This document shows, piece after piece, positions 1 through 64,000 of a DNA stretch of 64,000 nucleotides; the first letter of the stretch is position 1; each line of letters begins with the position of its first letter. The notes below the pieces were generated by a model. The model was not told the DNA's origin. It did no database searches and saw nothing but the letters and a program-made list of their open reading frames with translations. This DNA is from Lepidodermella squamata (Eukaryota > Animalia > Gastrotricha). Where the stretch lies: NCBI GenBank assembly GCA_047495785.1, contig JBLDXI010000085.1:186001-250000 (forward strand), read 5' to 3'. Position numbers and translations under genes: made by a program.

Positions 1-3000
1 GCAATGAGGTTCAAAATATTTATTGATAAATTGATTGCTTCATGTATTTTCTCAGGTTTTGCACCGACAGCGTTTCAAATGGCCGAGTGTACTCAACTGA
101 TGACAATCAAGCTATAGTCACATTCGGAACGCAGGGCATCCCAAGTACCAGCACCGGGTTCAATTTGACTGTCTACACAACTTGCCCGGGTACAACGGCC
201 AGCTCGCTCACTAAGGAGTGTCGAATTACCGATAGTGGTCGCGATTATGAAGGCCTGAACGTTACTACGTCGTCCAGGGGTAACGCATGCTTGAAATGGT
301 CAGACAGGGCAACTGTGTACGATTTGGGACTGCCAATGGGTGATGTTGCCGCGTCGGCAAATGCCTGCCGTGCCTATTTCACCAACGACGATGACCTTGT
401 ATGCTTCGTCGGCAAAAACGTTTATGGCACTTGTCCTCTAGTCGATAAGTGCCCAACAAGTAAGTAACGTGCTTAATTGAAAAGGGCCGATAAATAATTA
501 AGGAGGAATTTTTCAATTTTTTTCATTTGAACTCTAGCTTTTTGTCCCAATCCGTGTCAAAACGGGGGAACTTGTGTTGGCGTAGAAATTTGCAGCTGCC
601 AGCCTGGTTGGACCGGATCAACCTGCTCATCTCGTGAGTTCTATAGTTTCCAATAAGTTCCAAAATATTACGCTGACACTTTTCAGGAATCCCACCAAAA
701 TATGAAAGATGCTTCCTGAAGAGTACTGGCGATTTATCTATATGTCGATTGGCACCTCCGCTGTCTTTGGGCTGCCATGAGTTTGAGTACCCGGTAAGGC
801 TAACCAGTCATAGAAATTCCAGGGTTATTACCTAATTCAAGGGCGGTCGAACTTTTCCAAGCTACCAATCTTGCGAGAGAGGCGTAAGTGAATGAAAATG
901 TCTTCAAATATGATGATGCTCGGTTGATAAAATAGCCTGTGAGCTACTGCTTTTTACCCGCAACTGCCGACTTCAATTGTCGCTTTGGTGAATGCAATAT
1001 CGACGAGAAACGGGTAAAATCGATATTTCATACTTGAACACCTAGAATATTCCGAGAAATTTAAGGTCAAAATCTTCTCAAGCTCCAGATTTTTCGCCGG
1101 TGAGAATTTAATGGAATGCCGTAATCTGGCTACACCGGTAACACGATTTCCCTTTTAATTTGATTTCCACAAGCTTTTCGTTCCCTCCAGATGGAATATT
1201 ATCGTTGGTCCAGTTCGAACTTCACGAAAATCTCCTGCCGACCAACAAGGGGCTTCAAGCCCGGAGATGTTTGCTTGAATTCGATCATAAATTTCCTTGA
1301 TCAAAATCCCTTTGCAGCTTCTCAACGGCATTTACTCAGATCGGGCTAGTTGCCTTAACAGTATGCAATGATATAAATTTTCCATATCCGAATGACTTCT
1401 TTTCTTCATCAGACACAATCGCCGAGCAGCCGAGCAACTGCTCAAAGTGTCTATGCCCGGAGGGTCTGGGTGGCGATTTCTGCGAGACCTACGCTCCGCA
1501 CAAAGGTCCAGTTCATTGCGGCGGTTACATTGATGTAAAAGCTTGCAGCTACACTTCGATCACTTCACCTGGCTACCCGAATACCTTCGACGAGACAACG
1601 ACTTGCAATTGGTGGATTCGAGCGGTAAAATTTAACCATTTCTTTCAAATCAGAACTTGGAAGATTGTCGTTTCAGCCGGCTGGTTCTGGACTAGTTTTC
1701 GCCTTCGGAAAAACTCCTGATCTACCCAGCGAATATTTATGTAACACCCTGAAGCTAATTACCTGAAGTATTGATGGTTTTTCAATTAATTTTAGATTAC
1801 ACGAGTTGCGGGGATTATGTTTCAATTAAAGATTTCAGCAGTATTGAAAAATCAGCAATGAGGTTCAAAATATTTATTGATAAATTGATTGCTTCATGTA
1901 TTTTCTCAGGTTTTGCACCGACAGCGTTTCAAATGGCCGAGTGTACTCAACTGATGACAATCAAGCTATAGTCACATTCGGAACGCAGGGCATCCCAAGT
2001 ACCAGCACCGGGTTCAATTTGACTGTCTACACAACTTGCCCGGGTACAACGGCCAGCTCGCTCACTAAGGAGTGTCGAATTACCGATAGTGGTCGCGATT
2101 ATGAAGGCCTGAACGTTACTACGTCGTCCAGGGGTAACGCATGCTTGAAATGGTCAGACAGGGCAACTGTGTACGATTTGGGACTGCCAATGGGTGATGT
2201 TGCCGCGTCGGCAAATGCCTGCCGTGCCTATTTCACCAACGACGATGACCTTGTATGCTTCGTCGGCAAAAACGTTTATGGCACTTGTCCTCTAGTCGAT
2301 AAGTGCCCAACAAGTAAGTAACGTGCTTAATTGAAAAGGGCCGATAAATAATTAAGGAGGAATTTTTCAATTTTTTTCATTTGAACTCTAGCTTTTTGTC
2401 CCAATCCGTGTCAAAACGGGGGAACTTGTGTTGGCGTAGAAATTTGCAGCTGCCAGCCTGGTTGGACCGGATCAACCTGCTCATCTCGTGAGTTCTATAG
2501 TTTCCAATAAGTTCCAAAATATTACGCTGACACTTTTCAGGAATCCCACCAAAATATGAAAGATGCTTCCTGAAGAGTACTGGCGATTTATCTATATGTC
2601 GATTGGCACCTCCGCTGTCTTTGGGCTGCCATGAGTTTGAGTACCCGGTAAGGCTAACCAGTCATAGAAATTCCAGGGTTATTACCTAATTCAAGGGCGG
2701 TCGAACTTTTCCAAGCTACCAATCTTGCGAGAGAGGCGTAAGTGAATGAAAATGTCTTCAAATATGATGATGCTCGGTTGATAAAATAGCCTGTGAGCTA
2801 CTGCTTTTTACCCGCAACTGCCGACTTCAATTGTCGCTTTGGTGAATGCAATATCGACGAGAAACGGGTAAAATCGATATTTCATACTTGAACACCTAGA
2901 ATATTCCGAGAAATTTAAGGTCAAAATCTTCTCAAGCTCCAGATTTTTCGCCGGTGAGAATTTAATGGAATGCCGTAATCTGGCTACACCGGTAACACGA

Positions 3001-3285
3001 TTTCCCTTTTAATTTGATTTCCACAAGCTTTTCGTTCCCTCCAGATGGAATATTATCGTTGGTCCAGTTCGAACTTCACGAAAATCTCCTGCCGACCAAC
3101 AAGGGGCTTCAAGCCCGGAGATGTTTGCTTGAATTCGATCATAAATTTCCTTGATCAAAATCCCTTTGCAGCTTCTCAACGGCATTTACTCAGATCGGGC
3201 TAGTTGCCTTAACAGTATGCAATGATATAAATTTTCCATATCCGAATGACTTCTTTTCTTCATCAGACACAATCGCCGAGCAGCC
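1..3285 (+). repeat. Tandem duplication, period 1854 bp (1-1431 = 1855-3285)
   Basis: ORFs 42..467 and 1896..2321 are identical. I saw no differences by eye, including in introns, up to 1431/3285. Confidence 0.95.
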
Positions 3286-3709
3286 TGTCGTACGTTGTTA
3301 CAAGAAATCGAATAAAAACTTCGAAACATGTCGACCCTTGTGCCAAAATGATGAGTTCCAGGTAAAACACGTGTCTCTAATTTTTCCAAAATACTTGGGA
3401 TTTGATTATGATTCCAGAATGGCCCGACGTATTACTTCAAAAATCTGGCTGGTTGCCTCAAAGGGGTTGGGACTTTCGCGCTAATTGGTTTCAATTGCTA
3501 ATGTTTTTCTAATATTTAAGGGTGCTAGGCTATGTAAACGTAATCTCCAGCAGAATTATTGCACAGGGACGAACAGATCCTGCAAGAAACAGGTATTCCT
3601 TATCTAATGTTCTGAAATTTTGGTCTTTTTACTGGAATAGATCCGAATTTTCGGCGCATCGGACCTTTTCGCCGACAATCTGGCAGCGTGCAAAGCAGCT
3701 AACAAATGA
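1..3709 (+). CDS. Astacin-family gene A1, 3' part only (5' end outside window): CUB-kringle-EGF-repeats 1-3, an in-frame duplicated partial EGF-CUB-kringle-EGF-repeats 1-3, then repeats 4-5
   Basis: Manual splicing gives an open frame. Exon 56-459 encodes the CUB end and kringle (ECRITDSGRDYEG..ACLKW..ACRAY..VCFV..TCPLVDKC), exon 538-633 an EGF (CPNPCQNGGTCVGVEICSCQPGWTGSTC), followed by short repeat exons ending IRIFGASDLFADNLAACKAANK-stop at 3707-3709. Exon structure matches A3, A4 and A5. Confidence 0.85.
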
Positions 3710-4406: not shown

Positions 4407-4952
4407 ATGAAGCAGTTACTTGCTGTCACACTATTTTTAAGTATCGTAGCCATATCCCGTGGAATAGTAAGTGGCTTCTATTTTATTAACTCATTCCCAT
4501 CTAATAGCATACACAATTGAAGGACCCGGAGCTTGAAGATGTCCTCTGGCAATTGAACGATGCGATTCTTGCGAATCAAGGTCTCCCTCCAGTAAGTTTT
4601 CGAGAAATATCGCCATTAAATGTGTAATACCCCTTGTTTTCTAGGCCGACCGCAGTGTCCCACTGAAGCTATGCGGCGTTCCGGATCTGGAAACCGCGAA
4701 AGCAAAACTGAGGCGACAACTGGCAATCGCGGATGGCGATGAGCCATTTGTGGCCGGTGTGAAATTGGATGCCCAACGCTGGGAATTTCCTATCAAATAC
4801 AAAATCAGTGCCGCATACAGTTAGTTGCACGTTTGTCTACCGCGCTCCTTCTAGGCTAATTTTTTCAACATGAATTTCAACATGAATTTCAACATGGATC
4901 ATCGGACAATTTCGCTGACAGTCTTGCAGCATGCAAAGCAGCCAACATATGA
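4407..4952 (+). pseudogene. Astacin gene A2, internally deleted (exons 1-3 plus a remnant of the last exon)
   Basis: MKQLLAVTLFLSIVAISRGI | DPELEDVLWQLNDAILANQGLPP | ADRSVPLKLCGVPD...WEFPIKY. Intron 3 then runs into GGATCATCGGA...GCAGCATGCAAAGCAGCCAACATATGA, the terminal exon of the paralogues. Catalytic and all middle exons are absent. Confidence 0.85.
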
Positions 4953-6169
4953 CATTGATCTTGCAGTTATGATAAAACAACAAATCGAGTGACTATTTCC
5001 CTCATTTCCTCATTCTTTATTGACAAATAGCTGCCGATATTGATCAGTGATTAATAATGCTTCCTGAGCTTCGCTTATTATTGTGATTCGCTTATTCAAA
5101 TTATTTGGATTCGCTCAGAAAAATATATTTTTGCTTGTATAAATAGTAACACCTATTTTCTCAGGTATGAAGTAAATCATCGCTTAAGCCTAAAATTTAA
5201 ACCTTTCGATCATTTTTGTTCTGAGAGCTAACAGTTAAGAGAACTTGAAAGGGCTCTTTTACGATCCAACGGTCTTTTTGGTATTTTTGGTCAACAGCCT
5301 CTCATGCAAAAGGGCATCTTACCAGTCAAAAGATATGTGTAGACCTGGGATGCACCAAGCAACGACATACAACTATTCATCTTTTGTTTAGCCTAGATTT
5401 CAAGACCATGGCTAGCATCTGTGCGTAAAGCAGTGGATGGTGAAGAAGATGCAGCAGCGTCCCAAAACAACCAAGCTAAGATTAATTTTACGTTTGCTTT
5501 GAGTTGAAATGATGCAAAGACTGAGTACTCCCAGAAGAGATCCATTTGAGACCAGCCAAGAGCCAAGAAAATAGGAAGACTGTAGGGATACGCGGCTGAG
5601 TCTGAGTCAAGGAGCTGTGTGAAAATGCATCAGGCAGTTTTTCAAATCCCGCAGCCTGTACAGATTTTTTTATTCTTATAGATTTTACCGCAAAGCACCA
5701 ACATACCCGAACAACACCGAACAAAAATTCAGACCAAACTTTTGGCGTTGTTCCGGTGTTAAAACATGGAAGCGGAAAACCTTCGGACAAACCGATTTCA
5801 CCCCTTTGTTCGGCATAGCAAAAATGCCGGTCTGGGTAGCGATGAATCATTTTTACGTCGCCAAATGTTAGTTGCCAGGGCGACGTTGGTTAGCCACGTT
5901 GTTAGGGCGTCACTATGAATAAAAATATGGAAAATTCACCAGAATGTGCAGCTCAAGAAGTTAATAAATGATATTTTCTGATTACGTCGTGAATTCACAG
6001 AAAAATTTATCAGACTCAAGAATGCTGTTCTAGAAAAAACTCCAAAAAACTGGATGTTGCAAAATTACCTTGGGTACAGGAAAATTACCTTAGATGCTTG
6101 TTTTCCGACTCGCATGTATGCGACTCGATTGGCGCTGAAAATACCGTCGCAATGATGTAGCGTGGGTTT

Positions 6170-6538
6170 TAGCTTTAATAATTTTGCAGCTTCAGGAGAG
6201 GTTGATTGTCATATTCCGTCCTGTTTCTAGTCATTTCAACATGAATGAAGGTCCAATTGATACTGGGATACTGGGATCAAGCTAAAAGCCTCAGCAGTTC
6301 CTTCTTTGCTTTCCAAGCTCAGGATGATAATTTATTTTCAGACACTATAACTGATCAACCCGTTGTTCGATGCTACAAGACATCGAATGGTAACTTCAAA
6401 ACGTTAGATTCCGTTTGCCGCAATGACGAATTCCAGGTACAGAAAACCTCCAAATTTGTCAATATTATAAAAAAATAATTGTGATTTCAGAATGGCCCAA
6501 CGTATTTCTTCAAAAATCTGGCTGTTTTTTTTAAATGA
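6170..6538 (+). pseudogene. Orphan degenerate astacin-tail exons (repeats 3-4)
   Basis: TITDQPVVRCYKTSNGNFKTLDSVCRNDEFQ | NGPTYFFKNLAVFFK-stop is homologous to the repeat 4 exons, with Cys losses and a premature stop. Confidence 0.75.
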
Positions 6539-7267: not shown

Positions 7268-10200
7268 ATGAAGCAGTTGATTGTTGCCACCCTGCTTTTC
7301 AGTTTTATAACAAATTCGCAAGGAATTGTGAGTGGCTATATTATCTATTAATTCTTCTCAATTTATAAGCGCATGTTTTGCAGGATCCGGAGCTTGAAGA
7401 TGTTCTATGGCAATTGAACGATGCGATTCTTGCAAATCATGGGCTTCCACCGGTAAATTTACGTAGTATCGCTGTTAAATGTTAAATGACTATTATATTC
7501 TAGGATGATCGTAGTGTCCCACTGAAGCTATGCGGTGTTCCGGATCTGGAAACTGCGCAAGCAAAACTGAGGCGACAACTGGCAATCGCAGATGGCGAAC
7601 CATTTGTGGCCGGGGTGAAAACAAATGCCAAACTATGGGAATTCCCTATCTACTATAAAATCAATGAATCTCCGCCATACAGTTAGTTGAACGGTTGTTT
7701 AATGGCCTCGGTTTTTCTAGGTTTAGGTTTGAGGTTAATGTTAAGGTTGTGAGTTCGGGCATTGAGGAAGGCGATCGAAAAGTCACCCGCCCCTCAACTG
7801 AATCTTGCTTTATTTATCTGAACCAAATATTAGAGACCGATTTACAAGATTTAAAACAATGAAATATATTTCTCTATGAATCAACGAAGTTTTTTGGACT
7901 AACAAATTCGACATTTTCGCTTTTCGAGACATTTCGAATCGAATTGGCTGAAATGGCTTCATTTTTTGGTCTTCAATATTCAAATTTACGACCTCTAACC
8001 ACTGATATTTATTCGGAGTAGATAGCTTTTTCGGGCAGTACGGTACCTTTTAACAAATTATCCACGTTGAAATGTCGGTTTTTTTCATTGCAGCCGCCGA
8101 TGAGCAAGTAATCATCCGTGCAGGTATGGATCGTTGGGAGGAGCTAACATGTGCCCGATTTATCGAAATTCCCAATCTTGCGGCGGATCAGAGCGGTTTA
8201 AATATCGTTAAAGGATCAGGGTGAGCAATTTTCTTAAATTATTCATAGAATTATGTCTCGCGGCCGTTTTGAAGGTGCTTGTCGTTTATTGGGAGAATCG
8301 GGGAATCGGGGAAACGACAAGACTTGACTCTGGGAGGCGGTTGCATGGCGGTATCTATCAATTTCTTGCAAATTTGCTCTTTCAATGAACGCAACGATCT
8401 TTCAGGTATTCATTGTAGCTCACGAAATCGGCCACGCTTTGGGAATGGTTTGATTTATTGATTATTCAAATACCAAGGTCTTATCCTGTATGTTTTACAG
8501 GAACACGAGCATTCAAGGGCGGATCGAGATGACTACATCCGCGTCAATTACGAGAACATTATGGCGTAAATTCTTTTGAAAATTCAAATTTTCAGTCATA
8601 ATTGATATATTTTTGCATTTTAGTGGCAACGCTTACGCATTTGATATCGAACTGAACGATGAGAATTACAATGTGTCGTACAATTATGATTCTGTCATGC
8701 ACTACGGATGGGACGCTTTTGCAAAGTCGAACGTGCGAACCATAGAAACAATTGATAAGCGATACATGTACACGATTAATCAGATGAATTACATCTCTTT
8801 CGGAGATGCGAAAAGAATTAATATTCGATATAATTGTGGTAAGTTAAATTGCACCAAAAAATGCATAAAAATATTTGATCATTTGGCTGTTAAGTTCAAA
8901 CCCCCAAATTGAATATTTTTCCCTTTAAATGAAGAAATCTGAGGAAAAGGTATTTATTTTCTAATTTTCATCTTAAATTCAGTAACTATTTGTTTCTTAA
9001 ATTTTTTAAATAATGTTGGAACTTCCCAAAATTTGCTATTGATAATTTCGAATTTTTAAATTGAGGATAATTCTCTTATTCGATTTCGTTCACGTTAACT
9101 TCCGAAATCTCCGTTTTTAGTCGAAACTTCATGCAACAGCAAGCCTTTACCTCAGCCATGCCAAAATGGTGGCTATCAGAGCCCGAATAACTGCTCGAAG
9201 TGCCTCTGCCCAGATGGTCTAGGTGGCGATTTCTGTGAGTCCTACGCTCCATACAAAGGCCCAGTTCCATGCGGCGGCTACGTCGATGTAAAAGCTTGCA
9301 GCTACACTTTGATCACCTCGCCTGGCCACCCAAACATCTACGACAAGAATACGGCTTGTAATTGGTGGATAAGAGCGGTAATTGTTGCATCAGAGTTTAA
9401 TCAATTAATCTACGCCATCATTTTACCCAGCCCGTTGGAACTGGATTAGTTTTCGCCATCGAGAAGACACCCAATCTTCCTAACGATAATTACTGTAAGA
9501 TACTGTTGGGCACTTGCCGGCATATTCTGACTGTTTTTCTATTCTAGATCAGACGAGTTGCGGAGATTACGTTTCGATTCGTGATTACAGCAGTATTGAA
9601 AAATCAGCAATGAGGTTCTTAAATCAGTCATTGGTTAGTTTAATTCATCAATTTTTTCCAGGTTTTGCAGTGACAGCATTTCCAATGGTCGAGTGTATTC
9701 AACTGACGACAATCAAGCAATAGTCACATTCGCAACTCAAGGCTTCTCGAGTACCAGCACAGGGTTCAATTTGACCATTTACGCTACGTGCCCGGGTACA
9801 ACAGCCACTACGCTCACAAAGGAGTGTCGAATTACCGAGAGCGGTCGCGATTATGAAGGAACGAACGTTACTGCGTCTTCGTTGGGGGAAGCTTGCACTT
9901 CATGGTCCAGCAAGTCAAACGTGAAAGATTTGCAACTTCCAATGGGTGATGTCAACGCGTCGGCGAGTGCATGCCGTGCGTTCAACAGTGGGGATAAGCC
10001 TGTTTGCTATGTCGCCGATGGTTCTTATAAGCCATGCGCACTAGTCGATAAATGCCCAGCAAGTGAGTTCATAGCTTTCAAGAGCGCCTTATGTATACTA
10101 ATAGTAGTACGAATTCTTTTCTTATCCCTACTGAACATTTTGGCGATTTTGAAAGGTTTGGCCAACAACATTACAGAGGTGCCTCAGAGGGCCTATTGGC

Positions 10201-13200
10201 AAAACAAAAATCTGATTTAAAAAATGGCTTTCCAAACTTAAATTCCAACCAGCCTCTTGTGATTGGAGACTGGTTTCCAGTTATTTTGCAGCAGTAATTC
10301 TCAAAAGCCTTACTACTTAGTTTTCTGATTTTTATTTCTGTGGAATCGTTTTTCGAACTATTACTTTGTTTCTTTCCGGAAAAAGTTTCGTGTACGAGTG
10401 CGTGCCAGAACGGTGGAACATGTGTTGGTATAGAAGTTTGCAACTGCCCAGCTGGTTGGACCGACATAAGCTGCACAACTCGTAGGTTTTCAATCAACTT
10501 TTCAATTAGCCTTCCTAGTATTGGAATTTTCCTTTTAAATTTACAGCTATTGCAAATGATCCAGATGATGATGGGGGCACAGAAATTCCAACGAAATATG
10601 CCCGATGCTTCTTGAGGAGCACGGACGATTACTCTACTTGCCGTGTTGCAACGGCTAATGGCTGCCGAGAGTTCGAGTACCCAGTAAAAAACCATGCTAG
10701 GACATTAATTTGGTTCGTTTCGGCAGCTTTGCGCTGAGCATGAATGGTTAAGTCGGTTGAAATCACTACCCCTTGAAATTCCCCTCCTAGTCATCTTGGA
10801 GGGGAATTTTTTCCCCCCTCCCCAATATTCTCTCAACAATGGCAGCAACCGGGATCGATGTCCCAATAACTCTATCTACGTCGTCTGACTTGATTAACTG
10901 GCTATCTGGGCTAACCGCGGCGGCGCACACTTTAATTACCCTCATTTCATTATTCGCAAGTAATAACTTGATGTGAGCTAAAATCGGGGGAACAGGCTCA
11001 TAACTAAATTTGAAACATGGTGAAAAATCAAAAAAATTAGTTTTCAAAATAAACATGAGCAAAAATTACGGGCGCCTGATCGGCGGGAAATCGAATGTCA
11101 AATATCAGTTTTTGGTCAATTGCGGCGTCAAACTTTATTGTTTTGACAAATAAACACTCGAATGAAAGCCTGAATAACACAGGCTATCGAATGATATGCG
11201 ATACTTGAGTGAAACTTGATTTTATGCAAGCGCGGCCCCGTTCAAATTTTGACCTTAGCAAAGGGTGTGCTGTCAAATGGGTGCGCCTTGTCAACATGAG
11301 ACATTTACCGTTCGATAGAGCTCCTCGAATTACCCATTTCTCATGAAAATTCGCCACTGAACTCGCATTTGAATATGACCCAGAACTGCAGAAGCGATAT
11401 TTCGAAATTGATAGGGCTTGTTTTTTATCTCAAATTTTACCGCGAGGCTTACAGGCAAAAAACGGCAGCTGATATCGGCTTGCGGTTTTCACCCGTGTAT
11501 AGCCCGTGAAATGTTGTACTAGAAATGGCTAATAGATTACGCCCGGTCGCTTCTACACCGTCGCGGAAAAATTCACAAAAACGTCGAAATCTCGAAATAT
11601 TAAGTTTTAAGCTGGATCAAAACAAAGGTTCTACCGCGCCTCCTATAGGCAAACAACTACGAGGGCTACGAAGATGGGCTTAGTCTTGTTCGGTTCGTCT
11701 TGAAATTCTACGTCGGCCTGTGTAACGTGTTTGTGCGCACAGAACTGCTGCATGTGTTTCAAATTTGACAGAAAGTGCGTGTGAGTGCGTGTGTGAGCGC
11801 CGCCGCGCGCTAAAAATAGGCTGAAAAACGCGATTTGCCGCGCTTCTTATTCCTCGACAACCACGAGGGCTGCAAAGACGAGCTTGGTCTCTAAAAATTC
11901 AGCGGAACATTTGCTACATTCTAAGTGCATTAAAACACGAGCGCTACCAGGATGAGGTGTCAAAAAAATTGACGATACTCCAAAAAATTGAAATTTTAAT
12001 TTTCACTGAAAATCAATCGCGCGCAAATCGCTATAGTCAAAGGAAATCTTGCGAAACTTACCTGGAACTATTACCTGGAATTAAGCTAAAACCAGGTGAA
12101 CGGACTTGGGCTTGAAGTTGAGCTGAACCGTGATCGAAAAATATAAAAATTATTTTCTAATGTCAAATTTCCAGCAAAATTTCACGGCGTCACATTACAA
12201 GTCATTTTCAAGTCAAAAAATCATTTTTTTGTCAATTTTTTTGTCTAAATTTGACAAATAACCGCTTCAAAGGTGCAGCAAGTATTTCAAGCTATTGAAT
12301 GATATACGATACGTACATGAATCTCATTTGCATGTAGGCGCAGCTCCGATAAAATTTGACCTTAACAAAGGGTGTGCTGCCCACATTGTGCGGCCCATGA
12401 ACATGGGGCATATTCCATTCGATAGGCCGCCTCGAGTTACCTATTTGTCATAAAAATTCGTCACTACAATTTCAGATAAAAATGACCCGGAATTGGTAAA
12501 GCAAAATTTCAAAATTTACTTGGTCTGTTTTTTATCTCAAATTATACCGCGTGCGTTATTGGCAAAAAGCCATGAGGGGTATTGACATGCGGTTTTCACC
12601 ATAAAATAGCCCGCAAAATGTTGTAGTAGATATGGCTATTATATTACGCCGAGACGCTTCTACACCGTCGCGGAAAAATTCACAAAAATTTCGAAATTCT
12701 CAAGTTTTAAGGTGGGTCGAAACAAATTATACCGCGCTTCATAGGCAGAAAACTATGAGGGCTACGACGATGGGCGTAGTTTCGTTCGATTCCTCGCATT
12801 TTTCTGCACATGATGGTTGCAACTAACTTTTGCGCACAAATATTGCATACCAGTCAAAAATGCAAGTGAGAAAGCCTAACTGCGTGAGTGTGCACACTAA
12901 AAATATGGACAACCAAGTTTTACCGCGCAGCGAATAACACCATAACTACGGCGGCTACAACGACCAGCCTGGTCTCAAAATTCTTAGCTAAACATGCTCT
13001 ACGCGTTAGAATCATTAATATATCAGCGCAAATTCGGTGAATGAAAAAATGCGAGTGCAAAGTTGGTCAACAAAATTATGAAAATTGGACTTGACAAAGG
13101 GTGTGGCGTCAAATGGGTGCGTCCTGTGAATGTGGGGCTTGGACCAGTTCAAGGCGCGCCTTGAGTTACCTATTTCTCATGAATATTCGAAATTGAAGTC

Positions 13201-16200: not shown

Positions 16201-16300
16201 TGCAAGCTTAGCCGTGTTTTCACTCTTATAGATCAAGATTTTCGGATCATCGGAGCTATATTCCGACAATCTTGCAGCTTGCAAAGCAGCCAACCCATGA
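7268..16300 (+). CDS. Astacin metalloprotease A3 (23 exons): signal, pro, astacin, EGF, CUB, kringle, EGF, five 4-Cys repeats
   Basis: Signal MKQLIVATLLFSFITNSQG; zinc motif HEIGHALGM|EHEHSRADRD starting at 8421 and split by an intron; Met-turn YDSVMHY; NAS-type EGF [26 protein letters not shown]; CUB; kringle. Frame is open through all exons. Intron 14 (10684-15286) holds a 4.5-kb insertion, and its acceptor (AATAAAG) is weak. Confidence 0.85.
10687..15226. mobile_element. Unclassified 4.5-kb non-coding insertion in intron 14 of A3, with internal long imperfect tandem repeats and terminal hairpins (possibly Helitron/Helentron-like)
   Basis: Paralogous introns are about 50-60 nt. AGTA flanks both sides (10683-10686 and 15227-15230), and a normal 59-nt intron remains at 15228-15286. 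Three related units begin near 11190, 12295 and 13085. Hairpins lie at 15146-15165 (GCATCAGC-agtc-GCTGATGC) and about 15187-15223. No TIR or transposase ORF seen. Confidence 0.6.
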
Positions 16301-41400: not shown

Positions 41401-42204
41401 TATATAACCTTGGTGAAATTATTATCAATATTTCGGCCAAATCAGAGAATGGTCTTTTTCCAGGTCATCCCGATTGGGCGCACGCCCTACTTTTGCGGGT
41501 TGCTTTATTGGGGCAACAGTGCCGCTGCGCGCAATCGATATATTTATATTGATTGTGATATATATGGTTTCGCAGACGGTCCGGTGCGTAAACATCAGCG
41601 CGAATTTCTAGGATCTAGGACATGTCGTTGAGAAGTACGGATGCCTTCGCGTCCATTTGACACCATGTCATTCGCTCAGTATTCAATGAGTCATTTAAAG
41701 CCATACAGAGCACTCAATTCTGGCACATGAAACATCTGCTGAGTATCCATAGTGACAATCCAAACCGTGGACACTGCTTCAACTAACAACTTCGAAAACC
41801 GACATTCGAATGGAAAAAAATGAAAATATGAAATAAGACCATCCCTGTTCCTTTTTTAAAGTGGATACACCGACTTTCATTCGCAAAACTTTGAATTTTC
41901 CTGGAAATTTGTATGGCTTGAATATATTTGAAAATACCATAGAGCAAGGTTAAACCTATGCTGATTCATACTTCTCAGTTTATTTGTGAAGTTTGGCTTC
42001 ATCTCAGACGACATTCAGTGCCTAAATTGTGACTTCAATAGATTTTAGATCCTGTCCAAAAATGGCTAATTTTATTATGACTTGTTGCGATCAAATAGAC
42101 TGGAACTATGGACGTCGATCATGCCTAGTTTGCATACGGCACGCGGCCTCAAAATTACTAAAATTTTCCGACTATGCGTTTTGCGCCAAGTCCACGACAG
42201 AAGT

Positions 42205-49194: not shown

Positions 49195-52100
49195 TCAAGC
49201 GTAGGTTTCACAAAAAGAACCGCTCGCGCGAACGTTACAGTCCGAGTCTTTAAGGACCCCGCCTTGGTAAAGATAGGCGCAGGCATTTGTGCCGAAGTTG
49301 GGCTCGCCAGAATCCCAGGGCGGAAAGTTGGCATAAGGCGTGCCGTCGTCCCACGCCCAATTTCCAGACTTATTTGTCAAGCCAATGTGGGCGAAAGCAG
49401 AGAAGCCAAGATCTGCCAAGGCTTTGTCAAGCTCCGCCTGCGTTTGGATAGTCGCCAATAGCCCACCGGACCGCTTGCAACTTGTGTCGGCTGAAGGGCG
49501 AAAAAAGGCTCCAGGGAGATATTCCACGGTTTTGACGGCGTTTTGACAAGCTGATTGGCTTGTGAAGTTTTTCGTCGGGAATTTCCTCTCATCAACGTTG
49601 CACTCGGTTGATCGGCACGTAACAACGCCGTTTGGTCCGATACACCTATAATAGACGGCCTGAAGAAGAATTCACAAAATTCCACATCAACGGAAATGTA
49701 AAAAATGGCTGAAAACTTACCGGATTAAGGTCTGCTAAACAAGTCTCGTAATTTAATTGGAAGGATGTCGTATTAATGTAGAGCTTCATCTGAAAAGATA
49801 GCATCAAACACTAATTTCAACAATTTGTAGGATAGTAAAATTGTCCTTGATTTTATCTAGAATGGTGAGGATTTTTGAAAACGCAAGTACGAAGGAAAAT
49901 GTCCTGGCTTTCAGAATTCGACTTCGAAACGGCCCCTTACGGATAGCAAATGGGCGAAGAGCCCTTGTTATTTACGGCTAATTTACGGCTCCTTGCAATT
50001 AAAATTAACAACGGTGCGATTACATTCAGCGCGCGAAGTATGATCCTCGAACTAGGGAATATTTTCATACCCGAATGACCAAAGGGTCCCCCTGGGTTCC
50101 TTTCGATGTTTTCCACCTTGGCCTGCCGAACTGGGGGTACGATGTACGATACCCCTCACTTTTTTTAAGGAGTTCATAGATCATTCGAACTAGCCTCCAT
50201 TTATCGTTTCGAGTGGAATTCTTATATCTCCTAATTTCTAATGTACAAGAGGAAGAATTTAGTTGATTTTAAATGGTTTTTTCGAATTTCTAGTCTTCTA
50301 GTCTTCACGTATTGGCGCTATGATCGGTCAGTTTACGAATTGTACTACATCTTGTATAGCCGATGTCGCTTCTAAGAAGTATCGAATTTTGAGATCAGTG
50401 ATTTTCCCAATATCAACCGTCTTGGAACTCAACAGCGAAAATATTTATACGTAGCTCCGGGCACCATGTAGCTCGTAAAAATCCTAGGATCAGGGAGGGC
50501 ATTAGTATCGATCAAAAATCGAAACTCGCCGAAATCGTAAATAATCTGAAAAATATAATCTAGCGCCAGGACCCTTAAATTAAGTGCTGGAACCTCAATA
50601 TTAGTGGAGGAAATATTTGGACCAACAAATGTAACCTAGAGATAAAGGAATAATTACTGGGCAATTCCAGTGGGTTTAAAAAAACTCAAAATGAAGTTGT
50701 TTCACTTTTAAAAATCCTTAACGAGCGGGTTCTATGCCAATTGAGCAAACGAAAATTGAGCAACGAAAATTGAGCAACGAAAATTGAGCAAGGGCTTTTG
50801 AGCAACGATATTAGAGCAAACGAAATTAGAGCAAAATGACTTTTGAGCAAAACGACACTAGAGCAAATTTTATTTACAATAAATAACAGCTGCAATTAAT
50901 TATTAAATTTGCTCTAGTGTCGTTTTGCTCTAATTTCGTTTTGCTCAAAAGTCGTTGGCATAGAACCAACGAGCGCGGGCAACGAGCGCGCGCGCAAAAA
51001 TAAGCGGAAAATATGGGTCAATCTAAATCTTTCGTAAAAGGCAATTTCACTTATTCGCCTGTTTTTTTCAATTTTGAGTTTCTCAAGAGATTATATGGGT
51101 GAATACTATCAAAAACGGGTGCTACCTGGGTCGATCCGGCAGGACATTCTCTTCCAACGCAAAGCTTCGTTCCGCTTGAGTCACACTGAGCGGCAGCCTG
51201 GAATGAATCAACGGTCCTTCATCTGCCTTGGAGAATTTAGCTCGAAATTAAGCTTACCCCTCGCAGGCAGTTTTCCCGGTTGATGTACGGCTTTGGGGCT
51301 GCTTCCTGGGTCTCGTTGCCAGCCGAGCAGCCGACTGCACTGAGACGACAGCCATTGAAGATTCTCCCAGGGTTACTGAAACAGCGAACATGAGGCCTCT
51401 CACTATCTTGAACTTGAACTGAAAATAAATTCAGCTACACTAGGACACAAATAATTTATTGAATCACTTTTCCCATCGACGCAAGTTGCAAGGTTGGAAA
51501 ATGTTTGGACACCGGTAACCTGGTGAGAAAACAAAAAAAAGCCAATTTAATGCTAGAGATTTTTTTAGGCGACAATCAGACAAGACAATTGGAGCGGAAT
51601 TCTCAAAAATGTAACATTTATGAAAATATTCTCCAAATATTTATAATTTTATATTTTATATTACCCGGGTTATGAAATTCCTGAAATTTAAGAATTTTGG
51701 TAAATACCTGTTACCTTCAATTCAAAATTTGTGGTTTCATAGACTGATGTATTCTTTCATTTTTGGAACTCGATAATCTAAACGAAGCTATTTTAAAAAA
51801 TTTCGGAGCTACGTAGTTCATAATAGTTCGCGAAAATCATTATAAGGTTCGAATAAATAAAGGATATACCGTGCTGTTAGGGCACGTTTGGTTGATTGGG
51901 ATGCACGTGACAGGCAAGCCATTCAATGAGCACTGCTTGAATTTTTGATTCTGAAAAATACAGATTCTAATTTCAGCGATCAATTCATAAAAATCGAAAC
52001 GTACCGCAAAATTATTTCTATCAGCTTCACAGAATTGCAAACTCGAGCGAAGTAGTGATCGGCTGTAGAAAGGCTGGAACTGATCAAGAAAACAGTTATA

Positions 52101-52506
52101 GGCTGGAAAAATGTTTCAAAATATCGTACCGATATTTCATCCGGAGCTTTGCACGGAACAATTCCTGGGCGGCAACTAGGGGTTAGGGCAGCGAATTTGT
52201 AACACATGCGACCATTCTGTTCAGGAAATTAAAATCAGATCTGAAATGAAAGTTAGAGGATTACTCACCCCACTTCGACACAAATCAAAAGTGGAAATGC
52301 TGGCACCAGACTAAATATAGAAAAATTGTTGCTAAAATTGGGAAATGATCAAAAAATGTCAAAATAACCTGATATTCCTTCAATAAATCACAAGACGTCG
52401 AACAGTCAATGAATGAGTTGTCGAGAAGTGACATACAGCGCTTCCATTGGCACGAAACACCTCCAAATAGACAAAATATGAAGAAAAGACCTACAGCCCT
52501 CGTCAT
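49195..52506 (-). CDS. Secreted six-repeat + C-type lectin L3 (10 exons, EPN motif)
   Basis: MTRAVGLFFIFCLFGGVSCQWKRC..; all 10 exons found in frame; CTLD ends WDSGEPNFGTNAC..LKDSDC..SFCETYA. Intron 8 is enlarged by MITEs. Confidence 0.9.
50728..50967. mobile_element. 240-bp MITE (MULE-like) with 8-bp TSD in intron 8 of L3
   Basis: TIR GGTTCTATGCCAA / TTGGCATAGAACC; TSD AACGAGCG at 50720-50727 and 50968-50975; internal 14-15 bp GAGCAA-containing tandem repeats in both orientations. Confidence 0.9.
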
Positions 52507-54582: not shown

Positions 54583-54643
54583 GGCTTATTATCATTTTAA
54601 TCCATCTTATCGGGATGATAATCAAGGGGTTAATTTCTAAATA

Positions 54644-56001: not shown

Positions 56002-56463
56002 GCCGTCTTTCGGTGTATCGGACCAAACGGCGTTGTTACGTGCCGACCAACCGATTGCAATGGCGATGAGATGAAGTTCCCGTCGAAAGCCTTCACAAGC
56101 CAATCAGCTTGTGAAAACGCAGTCAAAACCGTGGAATATCTCCCTGGAGCCTTTTTTCGCCCTACAGCCGACACAAATTGCAAGCGGTCCGGTGGGCTAT
56201 TGGCGACTATCCAAACGCAGGCGGAGCTTGACAAAGCCTTGGCAGATCTTGGCTTCTCTGCTTTCGCCCACATTGGCTTGACAAATAAGTCTGGAAATTG
56301 GGCGTGGGACGACGGCACGCCTTATGCCAACTTTCCGCCCTGGGATTCTGGCGAGCCCAACTTCGGCACAAATGCCTGCGCCTATCTTTACCAAGGCGGG
56401 GTCCTTAAAGACTCGGACTGTAACGTTCGCGCGAGCGGTTCTTTTTGTGAAACCTACGCTTGA
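56002..56463 (+). pseudogene. Orphan lectin terminal exon L4 (repeat 6 + CTLD), near-identical to L3 exon 10
   Basis: Acceptor TTCAG, then an open frame AVFRCIGPNG...GEPN...SFCETYA. No exons 1-9 found upstream on the + strand. Confidence 0.75.
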
Positions 56464-57080
56464 AGCTGAAGAAACTTATCGGACTATATTAAGAGTCGAC
56501 ATTTGACTTTAAACTCTCTTTGTGTTGAAAATTTAAATTTGTGTTGAATCGGACCTCATCTGAGTTTATTTTGATGCCTTAGTTGGGCAACCCTCGGCGC
56601 TACTGCGGATTGCCCCACAGTAAACCTGCTGCCGCTGCCAACTAGCCAGAAGTAAACTCTTTTTTCAGTCCACATGAACACCTTGTTTTGGAAGCAACCT
56701 GGCATTGCAGCAGCTCCTTCGACTTTAGTTAATAAGGTTTTGTGCGGTGTTTGCACGTCGGTTTCAGTCCTGCTTATGGCCAGAGCTTCGGATTTAATTT
56801 GATTCGACTTACTTCTTAACTCACGGAACTCATTTAATCAATCAAAATTAATCAATAACCCATTTTTACAGAAATAAATAAATCAAATCAAATCAAATCA
56901 ATCATTGACATAGATAAATCACAATAAATAATGAAATATCAAGATTTTTACATATCTTTGGAAATTCTTTGGAAATTCAAGCAATGGATAAAATAGCGAA
57001 AATTTGAAACTGCCGTCCCTCTACATATCTAATTTCTATCAAAAAGGACGGAACTACCTTAGCGGCATCCGAGATTTTCG

Positions 57081-58559
57081 AATTTCAAGCAGTGCTCATT
57101 GAATGGCTTGCTGGTCACTTGCGTACCAATCAACCAAACGTGCCCTAACAGCGAATTAGGATCCTCGAAATAGGGGGGTATTTCGGGCCCCAATTTTATG
57201 ACCAAAGGGTGTGGAAAATCCCCCTGTGGGTTTTTTGGGGATTTTCCACACCCAGCCGAACTGGATAGCCCTCATTCCCCCCGTACTTCGCGCCCTGTTA
57301 GTTAGTGTATAAATTTTATCTTCTGTTTTTTAGAATATAACTATATATATGTCGTACCGTTTTAGGCGATCCTCCCAAAAGGCAATTGGGATAACCCATG
57401 AGGCAATATGCCTAAGATGGAGATATAAGATACCGCTAAGGACAATAATTGACAACATCTAGAAACACCGAATATTTCCTCCTGTAGCCTAAAAAGGTTG
57501 CTCACTGATTAAATTTCTAACTCGGTGGGTTGATAGAGATATAAGAAAGCTTTCCCGAAGTTCAAGCGCCAAAAACCGACTAATAGGTCATAGTTGGCAG
57601 CTGGAACTTTTGCTGAACCTTCAAGGTTCAAGATAATGATCCTAGTTCCGACTGATTGATTTCGTCATCTAAAGCAATTGATCAGTCTAAAAAGTAAACC
57701 CAACCCCATAGTTCACATCAATCGAATCTCATGGAGCCTGAAAGAGTCTCTAGGATCAACTTCTGTGGAAAAAAGGAATCTAAAAATTCAAGCAAGGGGA
57801 ACCACATACTAGAACTGGGGAACCAGAAATGAACTTGCTAGGGTTGACATCCTTTAAGAAAATTTAAATTTGAGTATTATTTGAAATTTCCAGTCATTAA
57901 TGCCAAAAAATGACAATAAGTAGAGAATAAATTGAAAATACCACGATTATCGGTCATCGATGTATCGTTTTGAGAAATAATTATTTTGAGAATTATTAAT
58001 TTGCTTAAAAAGTGGATTTTTAGAGCAATTGCTCTAGAGGGTAACCCAATTGCCAATTGGGGCGGATTGCTCATAACGGTACGACATATATATCTCGTAA
58101 TCACATATATCGTTTAAGTATCTTAACTATTGATCAGATTAAATTGGCTTTTTCTTTTTGTTCACAAGGCTACCGGTAGTCGAACATATGCCAACCTAGC
58201 AACTTGCGTCGATGGGAAAAGTTATTTTCAATAAATTATTATTGTCCTCTTGTAGCTCACTTGATTTTCAGTTCTGGTGCCAGACAGTGAGAAGCCACAT
58301 GTCCGCTGTCTTAGCAACCCTGGGCGAATTTTCAATGGCTGCCGTCTCAGCTCAACCGGGTGCTGGGCTAGCAATGAGACCCAGGAGGCAGCCCCAAAGC
58401 CGTACATCAACCGTGATAACTGCCTTCGAGGCGTAAGCTCTAAGTTGAACTTGATTCCAATAGTCAGACTCTGTGTCTTTATCCCAGGCTGCAGCACAGT
58501 GTGACTCGAGCGGAACGAAGCTTTGCGTTGGGAGATCCTGTCCTGCGTGGTCTACTCAG
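57081..58559 (+). pseudogene. Lectin gene fragment L5 (exons 5-8 only)
   Basis: An exon 5 remnant is cut by a MITE. Exons 6-8 are intact (58170-58559) and are followed directly by lectin 3'UTR-like sequence. Exons 1-4 and 9-10 are missing. Confidence 0.8.
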
Positions 58560-59457: not shown

Positions 59458-61550
59458 ATGACGAGGGCTGTAGGTCTTTTCTTCATATTTTGTCTATTTG
59501 GAGGTGTTTCGTGCCAATGGAAGCGCTGTATGTCACTGCTCGACAATTCATTCGTGGACTGTGCGACGTCTTGTGATGCATTGAAGGAATATCAAGTTAT
59601 TTTATAATTCTCCGATTTGTTTACCTTTATTTGGCTAAATATTCCACAGTCCGGCTCCAGCATTACCACTTATGATTCATGTCGAAGTGGAGTAAGAAAC
59701 CATTTAAAATGCATTTTCCGTATCTGATTTTGTCTTCCTGAAACAGAATGGTCGCATGTGTTACAAATTCGCTGCCCTAACCACAAGTTGCCGCCCTGGC
59801 AATGTTCCTTGTAAAGGTCCTGACGAAATATCAGTGCGTTAGATTATCAATCAATTTCAGCTTTGATTATTTTCTCGATCATCAGTTTCAGCCTTTCTAC
59901 AGCCGCTCGTTGCTTCGCTCGAGCTTGCAATTATGCGAAACCGATAGACTTAACTTTGCGGTACGTTGGGGATTTTAATAAATTAATAATTGAATGAAAA
60001 GCTGTTTTATTTGTTTCAGAATCAATATTTCAAGCAGTGCTCATTGAATGGTTCGCTAGTCACATGCGTCCCAATCAACCAAACTTGCCCTAGCAGCATG
60101 GTAAAGTTTTCAAGACTTGATTACAGATACTATGACCTATTAGAAGTTCCGAAAGATTTTCGCTGGCTATCGTCTTATAGGATTTTCGAGAGACATAAGA
60201 ATGGGTATTTTCAGCCCCGAATTTATCTCATCAAAAGGCCCTCTCTGTGGTTTTTCTGGGTTTTCTTGGCTGGAACTCTCGAGGTAGGGAATACGGTACA
60301 CCTCGTAATTCGCATACTTCTTCTTCTTATCATACTTTAACTCTTAAAATAATAGTATTTGTTCACAAGGCTACCGGTGGTCGAACATATGCAAACCTTG
60401 CAACTTGCGTCGATGGGAAAAGTGAATTTATTTATTTTTTTTGGATTTTTAACTCTAACAGCAGCTTATTTCAGTTCAAGTACCAGACAGTGAGAAGCTA
60501 CATGTTCGCTGTTTCAGCAACCCTGGACGAATCTTCAATGGCTGTCGTCTCAGCTCAGTCGGCTGCTCGCCTATCAACGAGACCCAAGAAGCAGCCCCCA
60601 AGCCGTACCTCAACCGGGATAACTGCCTTCGAGGCGTAATAAGTTTAATTTAATTTTTGTGTCGGATGAGCATTTGTAAATTCCAGGCTGCGGCTCAGTG
60701 TAGCTCAAGTGGAACGAAGCTTTGCTTTGGAAGAACATGTCCCGCAGGATCGACCCAGGTAGGAACCTCTTCTTTTCAGTTTCGATAATATTTGCAACTT
60801 GAATTCGTTTGCGCCCTTTTTAAAAAAATCATGAAATACAGTGATGAATGAGCTATCAATCACTACTATAACTATCTCTATATCATTCTAGCATTTGAGG
60901 AGCCTTACATGAAACCGTTACTGCCATTTCAGATCAAGCTCCACCAAAATTCGTCTTCCTTCCAAACAAATTACGACAACTGTTTAGCTGAACTTACACC
61001 GGCGGTAAGATTTATGCCGAAATTTTGCATTATCCACAGTTTCACGATCCTTATTTTAATGAAACTCCGCATTCTTCTTCATCAGGCCGTCTTTTATCGG
61101 TGTCTTGGACCAAACGGCGTCGTTACATGCCGCCCAACAGATTGCAACGGTGATGAAAAGAAATACCCATCGAAAAGCTACTCCAGCCAATCGGCCTGTG
61201 AAAACGCAGTCAAATCCGTTCAACACTATAAGCAGACCATAAATCGCCCAGGAGCCGATGAATATTGCAAGAATCTCGGCGGGCTATTGGCTACTATCAA
61301 GACGCAGGCAGAATTTGACAAAGTTAGGCAAAATCAAATCCACATGGCCCACATTGGCTTGTCGAATACGCCTGGATATTGGACGTGGGACGACGGTACG
61401 CCGTTTGCCAACTTCCCGCCCTGGGATACTCGCGCTGGCTCGCCTAATTATGGTGAAAATGCCTGTGTTGCACTAATCGATGGTGGGGTCCTCAGAGACG
61501 GCAGCTGTAACATTACCGCGTTTAGTTTTCTCTGTGAAACTTTTGCTTGA
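59458..61550 (+). CDS. Secreted six-repeat + C-type lectin L6 (10 exons, SPN in place of EPN)
   Basis: All 10 exons in frame; CTLD ADEYCKNLGGLLATI..HIGL..WDTRAGSPNYGENAC..LRDGSC..FLCETFA. Confidence 0.9.
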
Positions 61551-63067
61551 TGATGAAAAACTTGTCGGACTCGATTCGAGCCGATAAATCTATTTTGAAC
61601 ATTCGTTTGACTGCTGGACCTTTTCTGCGTATTTACGTAAAATTCTAATTAAGTGAATCGACATAAATAAAAATGGCCTCTGATTACCTCGGATTACCTC
61701 TGTTACCTCTGATATGATACTTAATGATCAATTTTCTCTATACGATTGCTTTGGTTTAGCCTTAACCCTGAGAAGTTGGTCAGTTCTGTCAATTATTTGA
61801 ATGAGATAGATCCAAAGCGAGGCCATGATGAGGAGTCTCCCTCGGGGTTTCAACGAAATACGAGTGGTATCGGCTGCAAATAGCAAGGTATGTAAACGCG
61901 TAAGGCAGATGTTAGCTATCTGGCTTTATGCGTTCGGGATTCACACCATGCGCGAAGCTCAACGGTTTCGAAATTGCTGGCAGCAGATTCTGAGCTGACC
62001 TCAGCGGCTTAATCGTTCCGCTTGAGTTGCTGCTTGTCGATAGCGTCTTACGGTAACGGTTGACCTACTAGCTTTGATATTGTCGCAATCGCTGTTTTGA
62101 CGTCCCACCGCCCCATGCTAGTCGGCATGGGTTCTAACGCATGTTCCCCATCCTCAGCGATATTTGAGTCAACGGTCCTCTTATCATCAAACTCGGTACA
62201 GCGACAAAACATCAGTTACGCAGTACAGCGAATGCAACGAAACAGCTAATTTTTCATTTCGCGACAAAACAGCATAAAACTAACTATTTAAAAGATGCAA
62301 CGTGTTTCTGCTGTTTTGTCACGTTTGCTGTTTTGAGTATTTGCTGTTATGACTCAACTTCTTCAGCGAGGTCAGAATTATATATTCAGATTCTGACCAG
62401 ACAATGATTAAAACTAAATAAGGATTGGATGATGATACCTCATCCTTTGTTGTTTCAAATCAAGTCAAGCACATTCCGACAGATTGAGCTCATGTTTCGA
62501 GGTAATAATGCAATAAAAGACTTTCCGAAGGTTTAATTCACCTTTAACCCTATTTTCGACGTTTTCGAAAATTATTACTTCGATAGAATTATATGGATCC
62601 GTATTCGGTCAAGTTGTTTTTCCCAATATAGTTGAAAAACACAAGATTCAGCCACTTGTCGCGTCAATGGTGTTTCATCCACCATCCGGACGAATTTTGC
62701 GAATTTTTTAATTTTGCTTTGAGGTCATGGTGCTCTGAAGCTTTTGCTTTGAAGCCTGTTACTAAATTTTCCCTACTTTGTAGGGGACCCATTGGGTGAA
62801 CAATAAATTAGTATCCCCTTGACTTCCAGCCAAAAATAGTTTTGTTGTTTTGAATTTTGTTTGCACTGGTTTTTTTGTATTTTTAGCAGTTGTTGTGAGG
62901 CCACCTGTGTAATCCATTTCTATAAATAGATAAAATACGTGATTTCTTTAAACAGCTTACATTGAATTCGGACGCACAGATTTCGCGTGCTCCCATTTTT
63001 GTTTCGGTTAGATATTTTTAAATAGCCTTCATTCAACGGTTTTTCAACTTCGTTTTAAACATATACG

Positions 63068-64000
63068 ATGAGGGCTTTGGCTTTATTTTGCTCTTTACTT
63101 TGCCTATTTGGAGGTGTTTCCTGCCAATGGAAACGCTGTATGTCACTGCTCGACAACTCATTCGTTGACTGTTCGACTTCTTGTGATTCATTGAAGGAAT
63201 ACCAGGTTAATTTTATAATTTTTCCGATCTTTTTCAAAATTGGCAACAATTTTTTATTAGTCCGGTTCCAGCTTTTCCGCCTATGATTTGTGTCGAAATG
63301 GGGTGAGCGAGCATAAAGCATTCATTCCAAAGCTGATTTTTTATTCGAACTTCGAACAGAATGGTCGCATGTGTTACAAATTCGCAGCTCTGACTCCGAG
63401 TTGTCGGCCCGGCATAATTCCGTGTAAAGCTCCTGATGAAATATCGGTACGTAATTATTTCTTCAGAAATTAGCTCAGTTATTTAAAGTCATGCATTGAT
63501 CAGTTCCAGCCATTCTACAGCCGATCACTACTTCGCTCGAGTTTGCAGTACTGCGAAATCGATAGGAACAATTTTACGGTAAGTCGTCACCTTAAAAAAG
63601 ATTTCGTCATAGGCAAGCCTGTTTGTTCATCACAGAATCAACATTTCAAGCAGTGTTCATCGAATAGTTTGTTGGTCACGTGCGTTCCTATTAACCAAAA
63701 CTGCCCGATTAGTACGGTTTGTAAATAATTTAGCTATGAATTTTTTAAGCGGACCTTCGCCTGTGTTCTCCTAAAATTTCGGTGAATTCTTAGTCGGTAG
63801 AAACTGGTTACTAGTTTCTTAGATCTGGGAGGAGAACATTTTAACAAAACCATATCTATTCATTCACTCTTCGAAAAAGGGACAGCTTGGCATGCAGTTA
63901 CTGATATTCTTGTATTTTTCTTAGATTAATGGTAGCCAAACATTCGCAAACCTTGCTGCATGCGTTGATGGGAAAGGTTAGGAGATTTTATTCTAAATTT
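63068..64000 (+). CDS. Six-repeat lectin gene L7, exons 1-6 (runs off the window end)
   Basis: MRALALFCSLLCLFGGVSCQWKRC..; exons 1-6 are in frame and homologous to L2, L3 and L6. Confidence 0.85.

What the first reader, a model, noticed from the sequence alone, without database searches (positions are those of the whole stretch)
1..64000. Interleaved astacin-protease and C-type-lectin families share one unrecognised Cys-repeat array: a candidate lectin-guided protease system
Seen: every intact astacin (A1, A3, A4, A5) ends in five 4-Cys repeats. Every lectin gene (L1-L3, L6, L7) begins with repeats of the same type, six in the complete copies. The families are physically interleaved, with A4 and L1 tail-to-tail and L1 and A5 head-to-head. 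Known: lectin-plus-protease assemblies exist (MBL-MASP; snake P-IIId metalloproteases with C-type lectin subunits), but I know of none built from astacins and this repeat. Inference: the shared array is a docking module or a common-ligand-binding module that couples glycan recognition to proteolysis in a secreted defence, digestion or host-attack system.
Basis: partly seen in the sequence, partly recalled or inferred. Interest (0 to 1): 0.9.

Follow-up and report, generated by a model that had tools for sequence, protein, structure and literature searches.

The report
Shared cysteine module on proteases, lectins
Neighbouring genes for secreted zinc proteases and lectin-type proteins of a microscopic invertebrate (probably a gastrotrich) share an undescribed block of small four-cysteine modules, most likely a common anchoring arm reused across this genome; nothing yet shows that it joins protease to lectin.

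Summary
Gene models give three complete astacins (signal-pro-astacin-EGF-CUB-kringle-[EGF/linker]-5 repeats) and four complete lectins (signal-6 repeats-CTLD). The repeat is one family: cross-family HMM scores beat Cys-fixed shuffles, and 8 of 9 introns match in place and phase, so one repeat block was shuffled whole. It matches no Pfam family or database protein. AlphaFold gives a small beta-beta-beta-alpha fold with no convincing structural relative. Arrays are under purifying selection (dN/dS about 0.23); lectin heads are relaxed (0.54-0.75). One RNA-like run shows spliced L1 and A4-like exons.

The docking reading is weak. Only L1 sits among the astacins, and it lacks the sugar/Ca site. 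Both arrays are basic, there is no spare cysteine for a link, and upstream motifs are not shared. The scan already noted this module on other DNA of this genome: with CBM42-like, LamG, EGF and CTLD heads, and fused to dead astacins (unchecked notes). Best reading: a lineage-specific, probably gastrotrich, anchor or assembly module (0.5). A specific protease-lectin complex: about 0.12. Side finding: a candidate MMP-like cysteine switch in these astacins.

The parts
56..3709 (+). A1, 3' part of an astacin-family gene (CUB end-kringle-EGF-5 repeats), with an exact 1854-bp direct duplication and a chimeric exon at 1413-1624; protease domain outside the window
4407..6535 (+). A2, broken astacin gene: exons 1-3 (4407-4819), a last-exon remnant near 4890 and a degenerate repeat-4 piece (6329-6535)
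7268..16300 (+). A3, complete astacin, 815 aa: signal-pro-astacin-EGF-CUB-kringle-EGF-5 repeats; 4.6-kb insertion in the intron inside repeat 1 (10684-15286)
24385..28601 (+). A4, complete astacin, 808 aa; repeat array 27436-28598; repeat 3 lacks C1 and C3
   Evidence: exon-only cover in run X1
29465..31731 (-). L1, secreted 6-repeat + C-type lectin-like protein, 445 aa; CTLD without a canonical Ca/sugar site; the only lectin between astacins
   Evidence: four introns spliced as modelled in run X1
33920..38487 (+). A5, complete astacin, 810 aa; Pro/Thr/Asn-rich linker in place of the second EGF; five complete repeats (37314-38487)
44996..47114 (+). L2, 6-repeat + CTLD, 415 aa; near-canonical mannose-type site (EPN, E, IQD)
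49195..52506 (-). L3, 6-repeat + CTLD, 413 aa; EPN kept, other Ca ligands changed
56002..58559 (+). Lectin gene fragments: L4 last exon (56002-56463), repeat-3 exon (57081-57158), L5 exons (58169-58559)
59458..61550 (+). L6, 6-repeat + CTLD, 414 aa; SPN in place of EPN
63065..63976 (+). L7, first three repeats; the rest lies beyond the window
24617..24788 (+). Astacin propeptide exon with a single unpaired Cys in LCG[VI]PD (also 4645-4819, 7504-7681, 34157-34331); no FXGDI motif

Best explanation
One lineage-specific block of about 45-aa, two-disulfide modules (types A-B-C-A-B[-C]) was attached by exon shuffling to the C-terminus of an astacin-EGF-CUB-kringle protease and to the N-terminus of a CTLD; each family then expanded by tandem duplication (shown, except the order of events). 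In both families the array has a free end and is conserved while the heads vary, so it probably binds something invariant. The most likely role (inferred) is a cationic anchoring or self-assembly arm. It would hold secreted proteins on a common extracellular layer (gut lining, mucus, cuticle or polyanionic microbial surfaces) and space the working head away from it. Proteases and lectins would then share a location without forming a dedicated complex.
For: Shown: cross-family HMM significance; 8 of 9 astacin-array introns match lectin-array introns in place and phase, including the lone phase-1 intron after repeat 3; the position-for-position match ranks 2 of 720 assignments; dN/dS 0.22-0.28 in arrays against 0.54-0.75 in CTLDs and 0.27-0.28 in catalytic domains; arrays 79-85% identical among L2/L3/L6 against 55-67% for CTLDs, and 67-71% among astacins against 52-62% for catalytic domains; arrays pI 8.0-9.2 with 2-6 N-glycan sequons; compact fold, pLDDT 87.7; paired loss of C1 and C3 implies C1-C3/C2-C4 bonds. 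The array is terminal in the astacins, where a pure spacer would serve nothing. Leads only: other notes report the module with many kinds of head.
Against: No ligand, oligomer or tissue data. Basic charge is common in small secreted disulfide domains. No conserved surface motif beyond RC, a Glu after C3 and an aromatic residue before C4. Purifying selection at this level is also expected from fold constraints alone. The repeat tree is poorly supported and does not recover cross-family position pairs.
Confidence: 0.5

Rival explanations
1. The array is only a rigid, protease-resistant spacer. The ancestor was a fused astacin-EGF-CUB-kringle-(repeats)-CTLD gene; the A genes lost the lectin end and the L genes lost the protease end, and the astacin tail persists for folding or stability.
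For: The two architectures overlap exactly in the array. Unchecked notes report fused dead-astacin-kringle-(4-Cys)n-5xCTLD genes and stalks of 6-12 modules elsewhere in the genome. Glycosylation sequons fit a stalk.
Against: A terminal spacer with nothing beyond it is kept intact in four astacins at dN/dS about 0.23, and is more conserved than the catalytic domain.
Confidence: 0.25
2. One reading: astacin tails dock on lectin N-terminal arrays to form a lectin-guided protease like MBL-MASP or snake P-IIId enzymes.
For: Homologous terminal arrays could pair. L1 lies head-to-head with A5 and tail-to-tail with A4. L1 and A4-like exons appear in one RNA-like run. Reported cis fusions elsewhere are a Rosetta-stone hint (unchecked). 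Some P-IIId complexes have no interchain disulfide (PMC4885070), so the lack of a free Cys is not fatal.
Against: Both arrays are basic. L1 lacks the sugar site, and only L2 has a near-complete one. No shared upstream motifs: L1 holds 8 of 26 astacin-shared 7-mers against a background of 4.7 +/- 2.3, at the 95th percentile. Cross-family array identity is only 25-31%. The module seems to be on many unrelated proteins. The RNA is of unknown tissue, so it does not show co-expression by cell type.
Confidence: 0.12
3. Each module is a degenerate Kunitz-like or toxin-like unit that acts on other proteins (protease inhibition, substrate exosite).
For: The model overlays on the C-terminal core of Kunitz domains (residues 19-54; Z 2.0-2.5, 32 aligned, rmsd 2.7-2.8). 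The aromatic-x5-Cys end resembles Kunitz F45-C51 (own knowledge).
Against: Z is below MbtH-like matches (4.7) and within chance range. No Kunitz Pfam match in 25 members at E up to 10. The P1 loop region (Kunitz residues 1-18) and the third disulfide are absent.
Confidence: 0.08

Closest known systems
Astacin family M12A, multidomain invertebrate members with EGF and CUB (nematode NAS type; ShKT-tailed astacins)
   Same: Signal, propeptide, HEXXHXXGXXH-E-XXRXDRD, S[IV]MHY Met-turn, four catalytic-domain Cys, EGF and CUB, and a tail of small disulfide modules. Kringle and CLEC are listed among astacin accessory domains (PMC9848320).
   Different: EGF-CUB-kringle-(EGF)-5 unrecognised modules; the propeptide lacks FXGDI and has an unpaired Cys in LCG[VI]PD. 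The review found no astacins in Gastrotricha.
Secreted stalk-and-head C-type lectins (collectins such as MBL; single-CTLD invertebrate lectins)
   Same: Conserved N-terminal arm plus a variable C-terminal CTLD (Pfam Lectin_C; fold like Mincle/CD23).
   Different: The arm is six disulfide modules, not collagen plus coiled coil. Only L2 has a near-canonical Ca/sugar site. No MASP-type serine protease.
Snake P-IIId metalloproteases (RVV-X, multactivase)
   Same: Idea of a metzincin plus C-type lectin-like partners; snaclecs also do not bind sugar (PMC4885070).
   Different: Those are M12B enzymes bound directly through the CTLD (RVV-X by a Cys389-Cys133 bond). No shared repeat; no complex shown here and no spare Cys.
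Scallop byssal '4C-repeat' proteins / Sbp5-2
   Same: Secreted Cys-spaced tandem repeats in an extracellular material (PMC9168380).
   Different: Sbp5-2 motifs have two Cys each and are acidic (PMC9117251); these have four and are basic. No hit in the profile search. Sequences not compared directly.
Kunitz/BPTI core; MbtH-like fold
   Same: Beta-hairpin, short strand and C-terminal helix (Z 2.0-2.5 and 3.0-4.7).
   Different: Scores are in the range of a common small arrangement; disulfide pattern differs; no sequence match.

Membership tests
Astacin (M12A) | HEXXHXXGXXH followed by E-XXRXDRD | tested here: met
   A3, A4 and A5 all intact (definition PMC9848320)
Astacin (M12A) | SIMHY-type Met-turn with Tyr ligand; Pfam Astacin match | tested here: met
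   SVMHY/SIMHY; PF01400 E 3.6e-13 on one exon
Astacin (M12A) | Propeptide FXGDI aspartate switch of animal orthologues | tested here: not met
   Absent in A2-A5; one unpaired Cys in LCG[VI]PD instead. Lowers 'typical animal astacin zymogen', not catalytic-domain membership
Astacin (M12A) | Zinc-dependent proteolytic activity | not testable with these tools
   needs assay
C-type lectin-like domain | CTLD fold with four Cys | tested here: met
   PF00059 above cut-off for L1, L2, L3, L6; Foldseek E 1.9e-7 to Mincle
Ca-dependent sugar-binding C-type lectin | EPN/QPD plus Glu and WND-type Ca site 2 | tested here: inconclusive
   L2 near-complete (EPN, E, IQD); L3/L4 EPN only; L6 SPN; L1 none
Lectin-protease complex (MBL-MASP / P-IIId) | Physical complex of lectin and protease chains | not testable with these tools
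   no multimer prediction or binding data
Lectin-protease complex (RVV-X type) | Spare Cys in both chains for an interchain bond | tested here: not met
   Mature Cys counts are even: lectins 28; astacins 48, 46, 42 after the propeptide
Lectin-protease complex (MBL-MASP) | Collagen stalk on the lectin; CUB-EGF-CUB serine protease | tested here: not met
   No collagen; the protease is an astacin with one EGF-CUB
Kunitz/BPTI | Six Cys, P1 loop, Pfam match | tested here: not met
   Four Cys; no Pfam hit; structural Z 2.0-2.5 over residues 19-54 only
Kringle | Six-Cys triple loop, Pfam PF00051 | tested here: inconclusive
   E 1.2e-5, 26 bits, below the 34.3 cut-off, model positions 3-74 of 79; kringle-like

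The most novel reading that the evidence does not exclude
The undescribed module is a plug-in assembly domain. Any secreted protein that carries the array (active cysteine-switch astacins, dead astacins, lectins with different heads) co-assembles with others, giving a combinatorial, lectin-targeted protease system evolved independently of MBL-MASP.
Probability: 0.12. Interest if true: 0.8.

Novelty: new variant of a known kind. Interest (0 to 1): 0.4.

Why it matters
It documents an apparently undescribed small extracellular module that has been shuffled as an ordered block between a protease and a lectin family in a phylum with almost no annotated proteins. A 2023 review found no astacins in Gastrotricha. 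Small soluble constructs (five or six modules) make the anchor-versus-docking question easy to test. If the propeptide Cys is a real switch, it would be the first in an animal astacin; the review names only bacterial myroilysin as proven. Lineage-specific Cys modules on astacins and lectins are common in invertebrates, so without binding data this is of moderate interest.

Tried and rejected
Pfam on single repeats and on 25 aligned members: nothing meaningful. PDB sequence search with the repeat profile: 0 hits. Profile search of 1.84 billion representatives: 4 hits, all low-complexity or translated DNA repeats, rejected; the same profile scores this window's own complete proteins at E 2e-52 to 6e-9, so close relatives would have shown, while remote ones may not. 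Word-indexed search with repeat 6 + CTLD: none at E 1e-8, limited to 0.55-1.75 times the query length. Two metagenome scans: none. ESM Atlas: nothing for the repeat, only Lectin_C for the last exon. Fold searches: best Z 4.7 (MbtH-like), Kunitz 2.5, not accepted. Scallop Sbp5-2 rejected on Cys number and charge. Shared promoter motifs between families: not found. Repeat phylogeny: groups by position within each family but is unresolved across families. An early guess of a nematode host was dropped. Spliced full-length proteins have no reference, so they could not be sent to remote search or folding tools: whole arrays, the zymogen and any complex were not folded.
Full report
Gene models. The window is intron-rich animal DNA, 41% GC. 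I built exon models by hand and checked every splice site. A3 (7268-16300), A4 (24385-28601) and A5 (33920-38487) are complete, 808-815 aa: signal peptide, 58-aa propeptide, astacin domain, EGF, CUB, kringle-like domain, a second EGF (A5: a Pro/Thr/Asn linker), then five repeats. A1 is cut by the window start and holds an exact 1854-bp direct duplication with a chimeric exon; A2 is broken. L1 (31731-29465, minus), L2, L3 and L6 are complete, 413-445 aa: signal peptide, six repeats, one CTLD. L7 runs off the window; L4, L5 and a piece at 57081 are fragments. Pfam confirms Astacin, EGF, CUB, Lectin_C and a sub-threshold kringle. All three complete astacins keep the full zinc motif and Met-turn.

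The repeat is real and shared. 47 copies have spacing C-x7-10-C-x3-9-C-x15-26-C. A profile from one family detects the other above shuffles that keep every Cys in place. The arrays are collinear: eight of the nine introns in the astacin array recur in the lectin array at the same place and phase, including the single phase-1 intron after repeat 3. Matching repeat n to repeat n ranks 2 of 720 assignments, and repeats 1 and 4 resemble each other, in line with an A-B-C order. So one block was shuffled whole; this is not convergent Cys spacing. A tree of these short units does not resolve cross-family pairs. In A1 and A4, repeat 3 has lost C1 and C3 together (probably one event), which implies C1-C3 and C2-C4 disulfides (inference).

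It is unrecognised. No Pfam family, PDB sequence, database protein, metagenome contig or Atlas cluster matched. AlphaFold2 models one repeat at pLDDT 87.7 as a beta-hairpin, a third strand and a C-terminal helix. Structural matches are weak: MbtH-like Z 4.7 (rmsd 2.0, 40 aligned), Kunitz core Z 2.5 (32 aligned). These neither show homology nor prove a new fold. The blank is also limited by sampling, as this organism has no near relative in the databases: its CPVL-like carboxypeptidase is at most 41% identical to anything.

Organism. Not given. The scan's size (1993 windows on 147 pieces) fits the published Lepidodermella squamata assembly (122 Mb, 157 contigs, 43% GC; PMC11660948), the best DNA run is from 2024, and earlier notes say 'probably a gastrotrich'. 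This is an inference. That assembly was made from amplified DNA, so the exact A1 duplication could be an artefact.

Expression. On 26400-32000, run X1 (RNA by guess) has contigs on exons and none in the bins of the long introns or between the genes. It shows L1 introns 4 and 9 as joints and introns 7 and 8 as loose ends that match the next exon, none of them in DNA run X2. A4 exons are covered at low depth, with fold-back joints that break at modelled exon ends. Some contigs differ by 4-5%, so close paralogues contribute, and X2 holds further copies at 90-95% identity. This supports the models and shows both families transcribed in one sample; it says nothing about tissue.

What the array does. 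It is the conserved part: 79-85% identical among L2/L3/L6 against 55-67% for their CTLDs, and 67-71% among astacins against 52-62% for catalytic domains. dN/dS is 0.22-0.28 in arrays and 0.54-0.75 in CTLDs. It has a free end in both families, so a pure spacer does not explain the astacin tails. It is basic in both (net +8 to +18 and +3 to +8) and carries N-glycan sequons. A conserved cationic arm with a variable head best fits attachment to an invariant, probably anionic, extracellular layer, or self-assembly (0.5, inferred). A spacer left from a fused ancestor is the main rival (0.25).

Against specific docking. Only L1 lies among the astacins, and its CTLD has none of the usual Ca/sugar ligands; only L2, 6.5 kb past A5, has a near-complete mannose-type site. 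Like charges, even Cys counts in the mature chains (RVV-X uses a spare Cys, though multactivase does not, PMC4885070) and unshared upstream motifs give no support. Earlier scan notes, unchecked by me, describe what seems to be the same module in many clusters: stalks of 6-12 units ending in CTLD, CBM42-like, LamG-like or EGF heads, and dead astacin-EGF-CUB-kringle-(4-Cys)n-CTLD fusions. If right, an astacin and a lectin sharing it is expected from a genome-wide building block, though the fusions hint that the two kinds of head work in one setting. I put a dedicated complex at 0.12.

Comparison. The proteases are astacins by their catalytic domain; astacins are known for very varied tails, including kringle and CLEC (PMC9848320). 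The lectins are CTLD proteins. The system fails the defining features of MBL-MASP and RVV-X that I could test, and the decisive one, a physical complex, could not be tested. One departure is worth a separate look: the propeptides lack the FXGDI aspartate switch shared by animal astacins and carry a lone Cys in LCG[VI]PD, like the MMP switch (own knowledge: PRCGVPD). The review knows a proven Cys switch only in bacterial myroilysin and found no gastrotrich astacins.

Verdict. A real, apparently undescribed lineage-specific module shuffled as a block between two known protein kinds; already noted elsewhere in this genome by the scan; the lectin-guided protease complex is unsupported. New variant of a known kind, interest 0.4.

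Noticed in passing
window 4645-4819, 7504-7681, 24617-24788, 34157-34331 (+): Astacin propeptides lack FXGDI and carry one unpaired Cys in an MMP-like LCG[VI]PD motif: candidate cysteine switch in an animal astacin.
   Followed up: partly
window 21314-21032 (-): Two-exon gene for a 75-aa secreted peptide with an inhibitor-cystine-knot-type Cys pattern (C-x4-C-x5-CC-x4-C-x8-C); no Pfam hit for exon 1.
   Followed up: partly
window 43367-44782 (+): Intronless CPVL-like S10 serine carboxypeptidase (471 aa) in an intron-rich region, just after an RT fragment (42029-43087): possible retrogene; best database identity 41%.
   Followed up: partly
window 1-3285: Exact 1854-bp direct duplication inside A1, joined at a short microhomology and making a repeat/EGF chimeric exon; recent event or amplification artefact.
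   Followed up: partly
window 49195-49659 (-) and 56002-56463 (+): L3 and L4 last exons face opposite ways and share an identical 286-nt 3' run (446 of 462 identical): recent inversion-duplication or conversion.
   Followed up: partly
upstream of 44996, 52506, 59458, 63065: Conserved upstream block (ATACGTGA, AATTCGGACGCA, CGCGTGC) in L2, L3, L6 and L7, absent from L1 and the astacins.
   Followed up: partly
window 17466-18239 (-) and about 10700-15280: MULE transposase piece (PF10551, E 2.5e-9); and a 4.6-kb repetitive insertion in an intron of A3 that leaves the frame intact.
   Followed up: no
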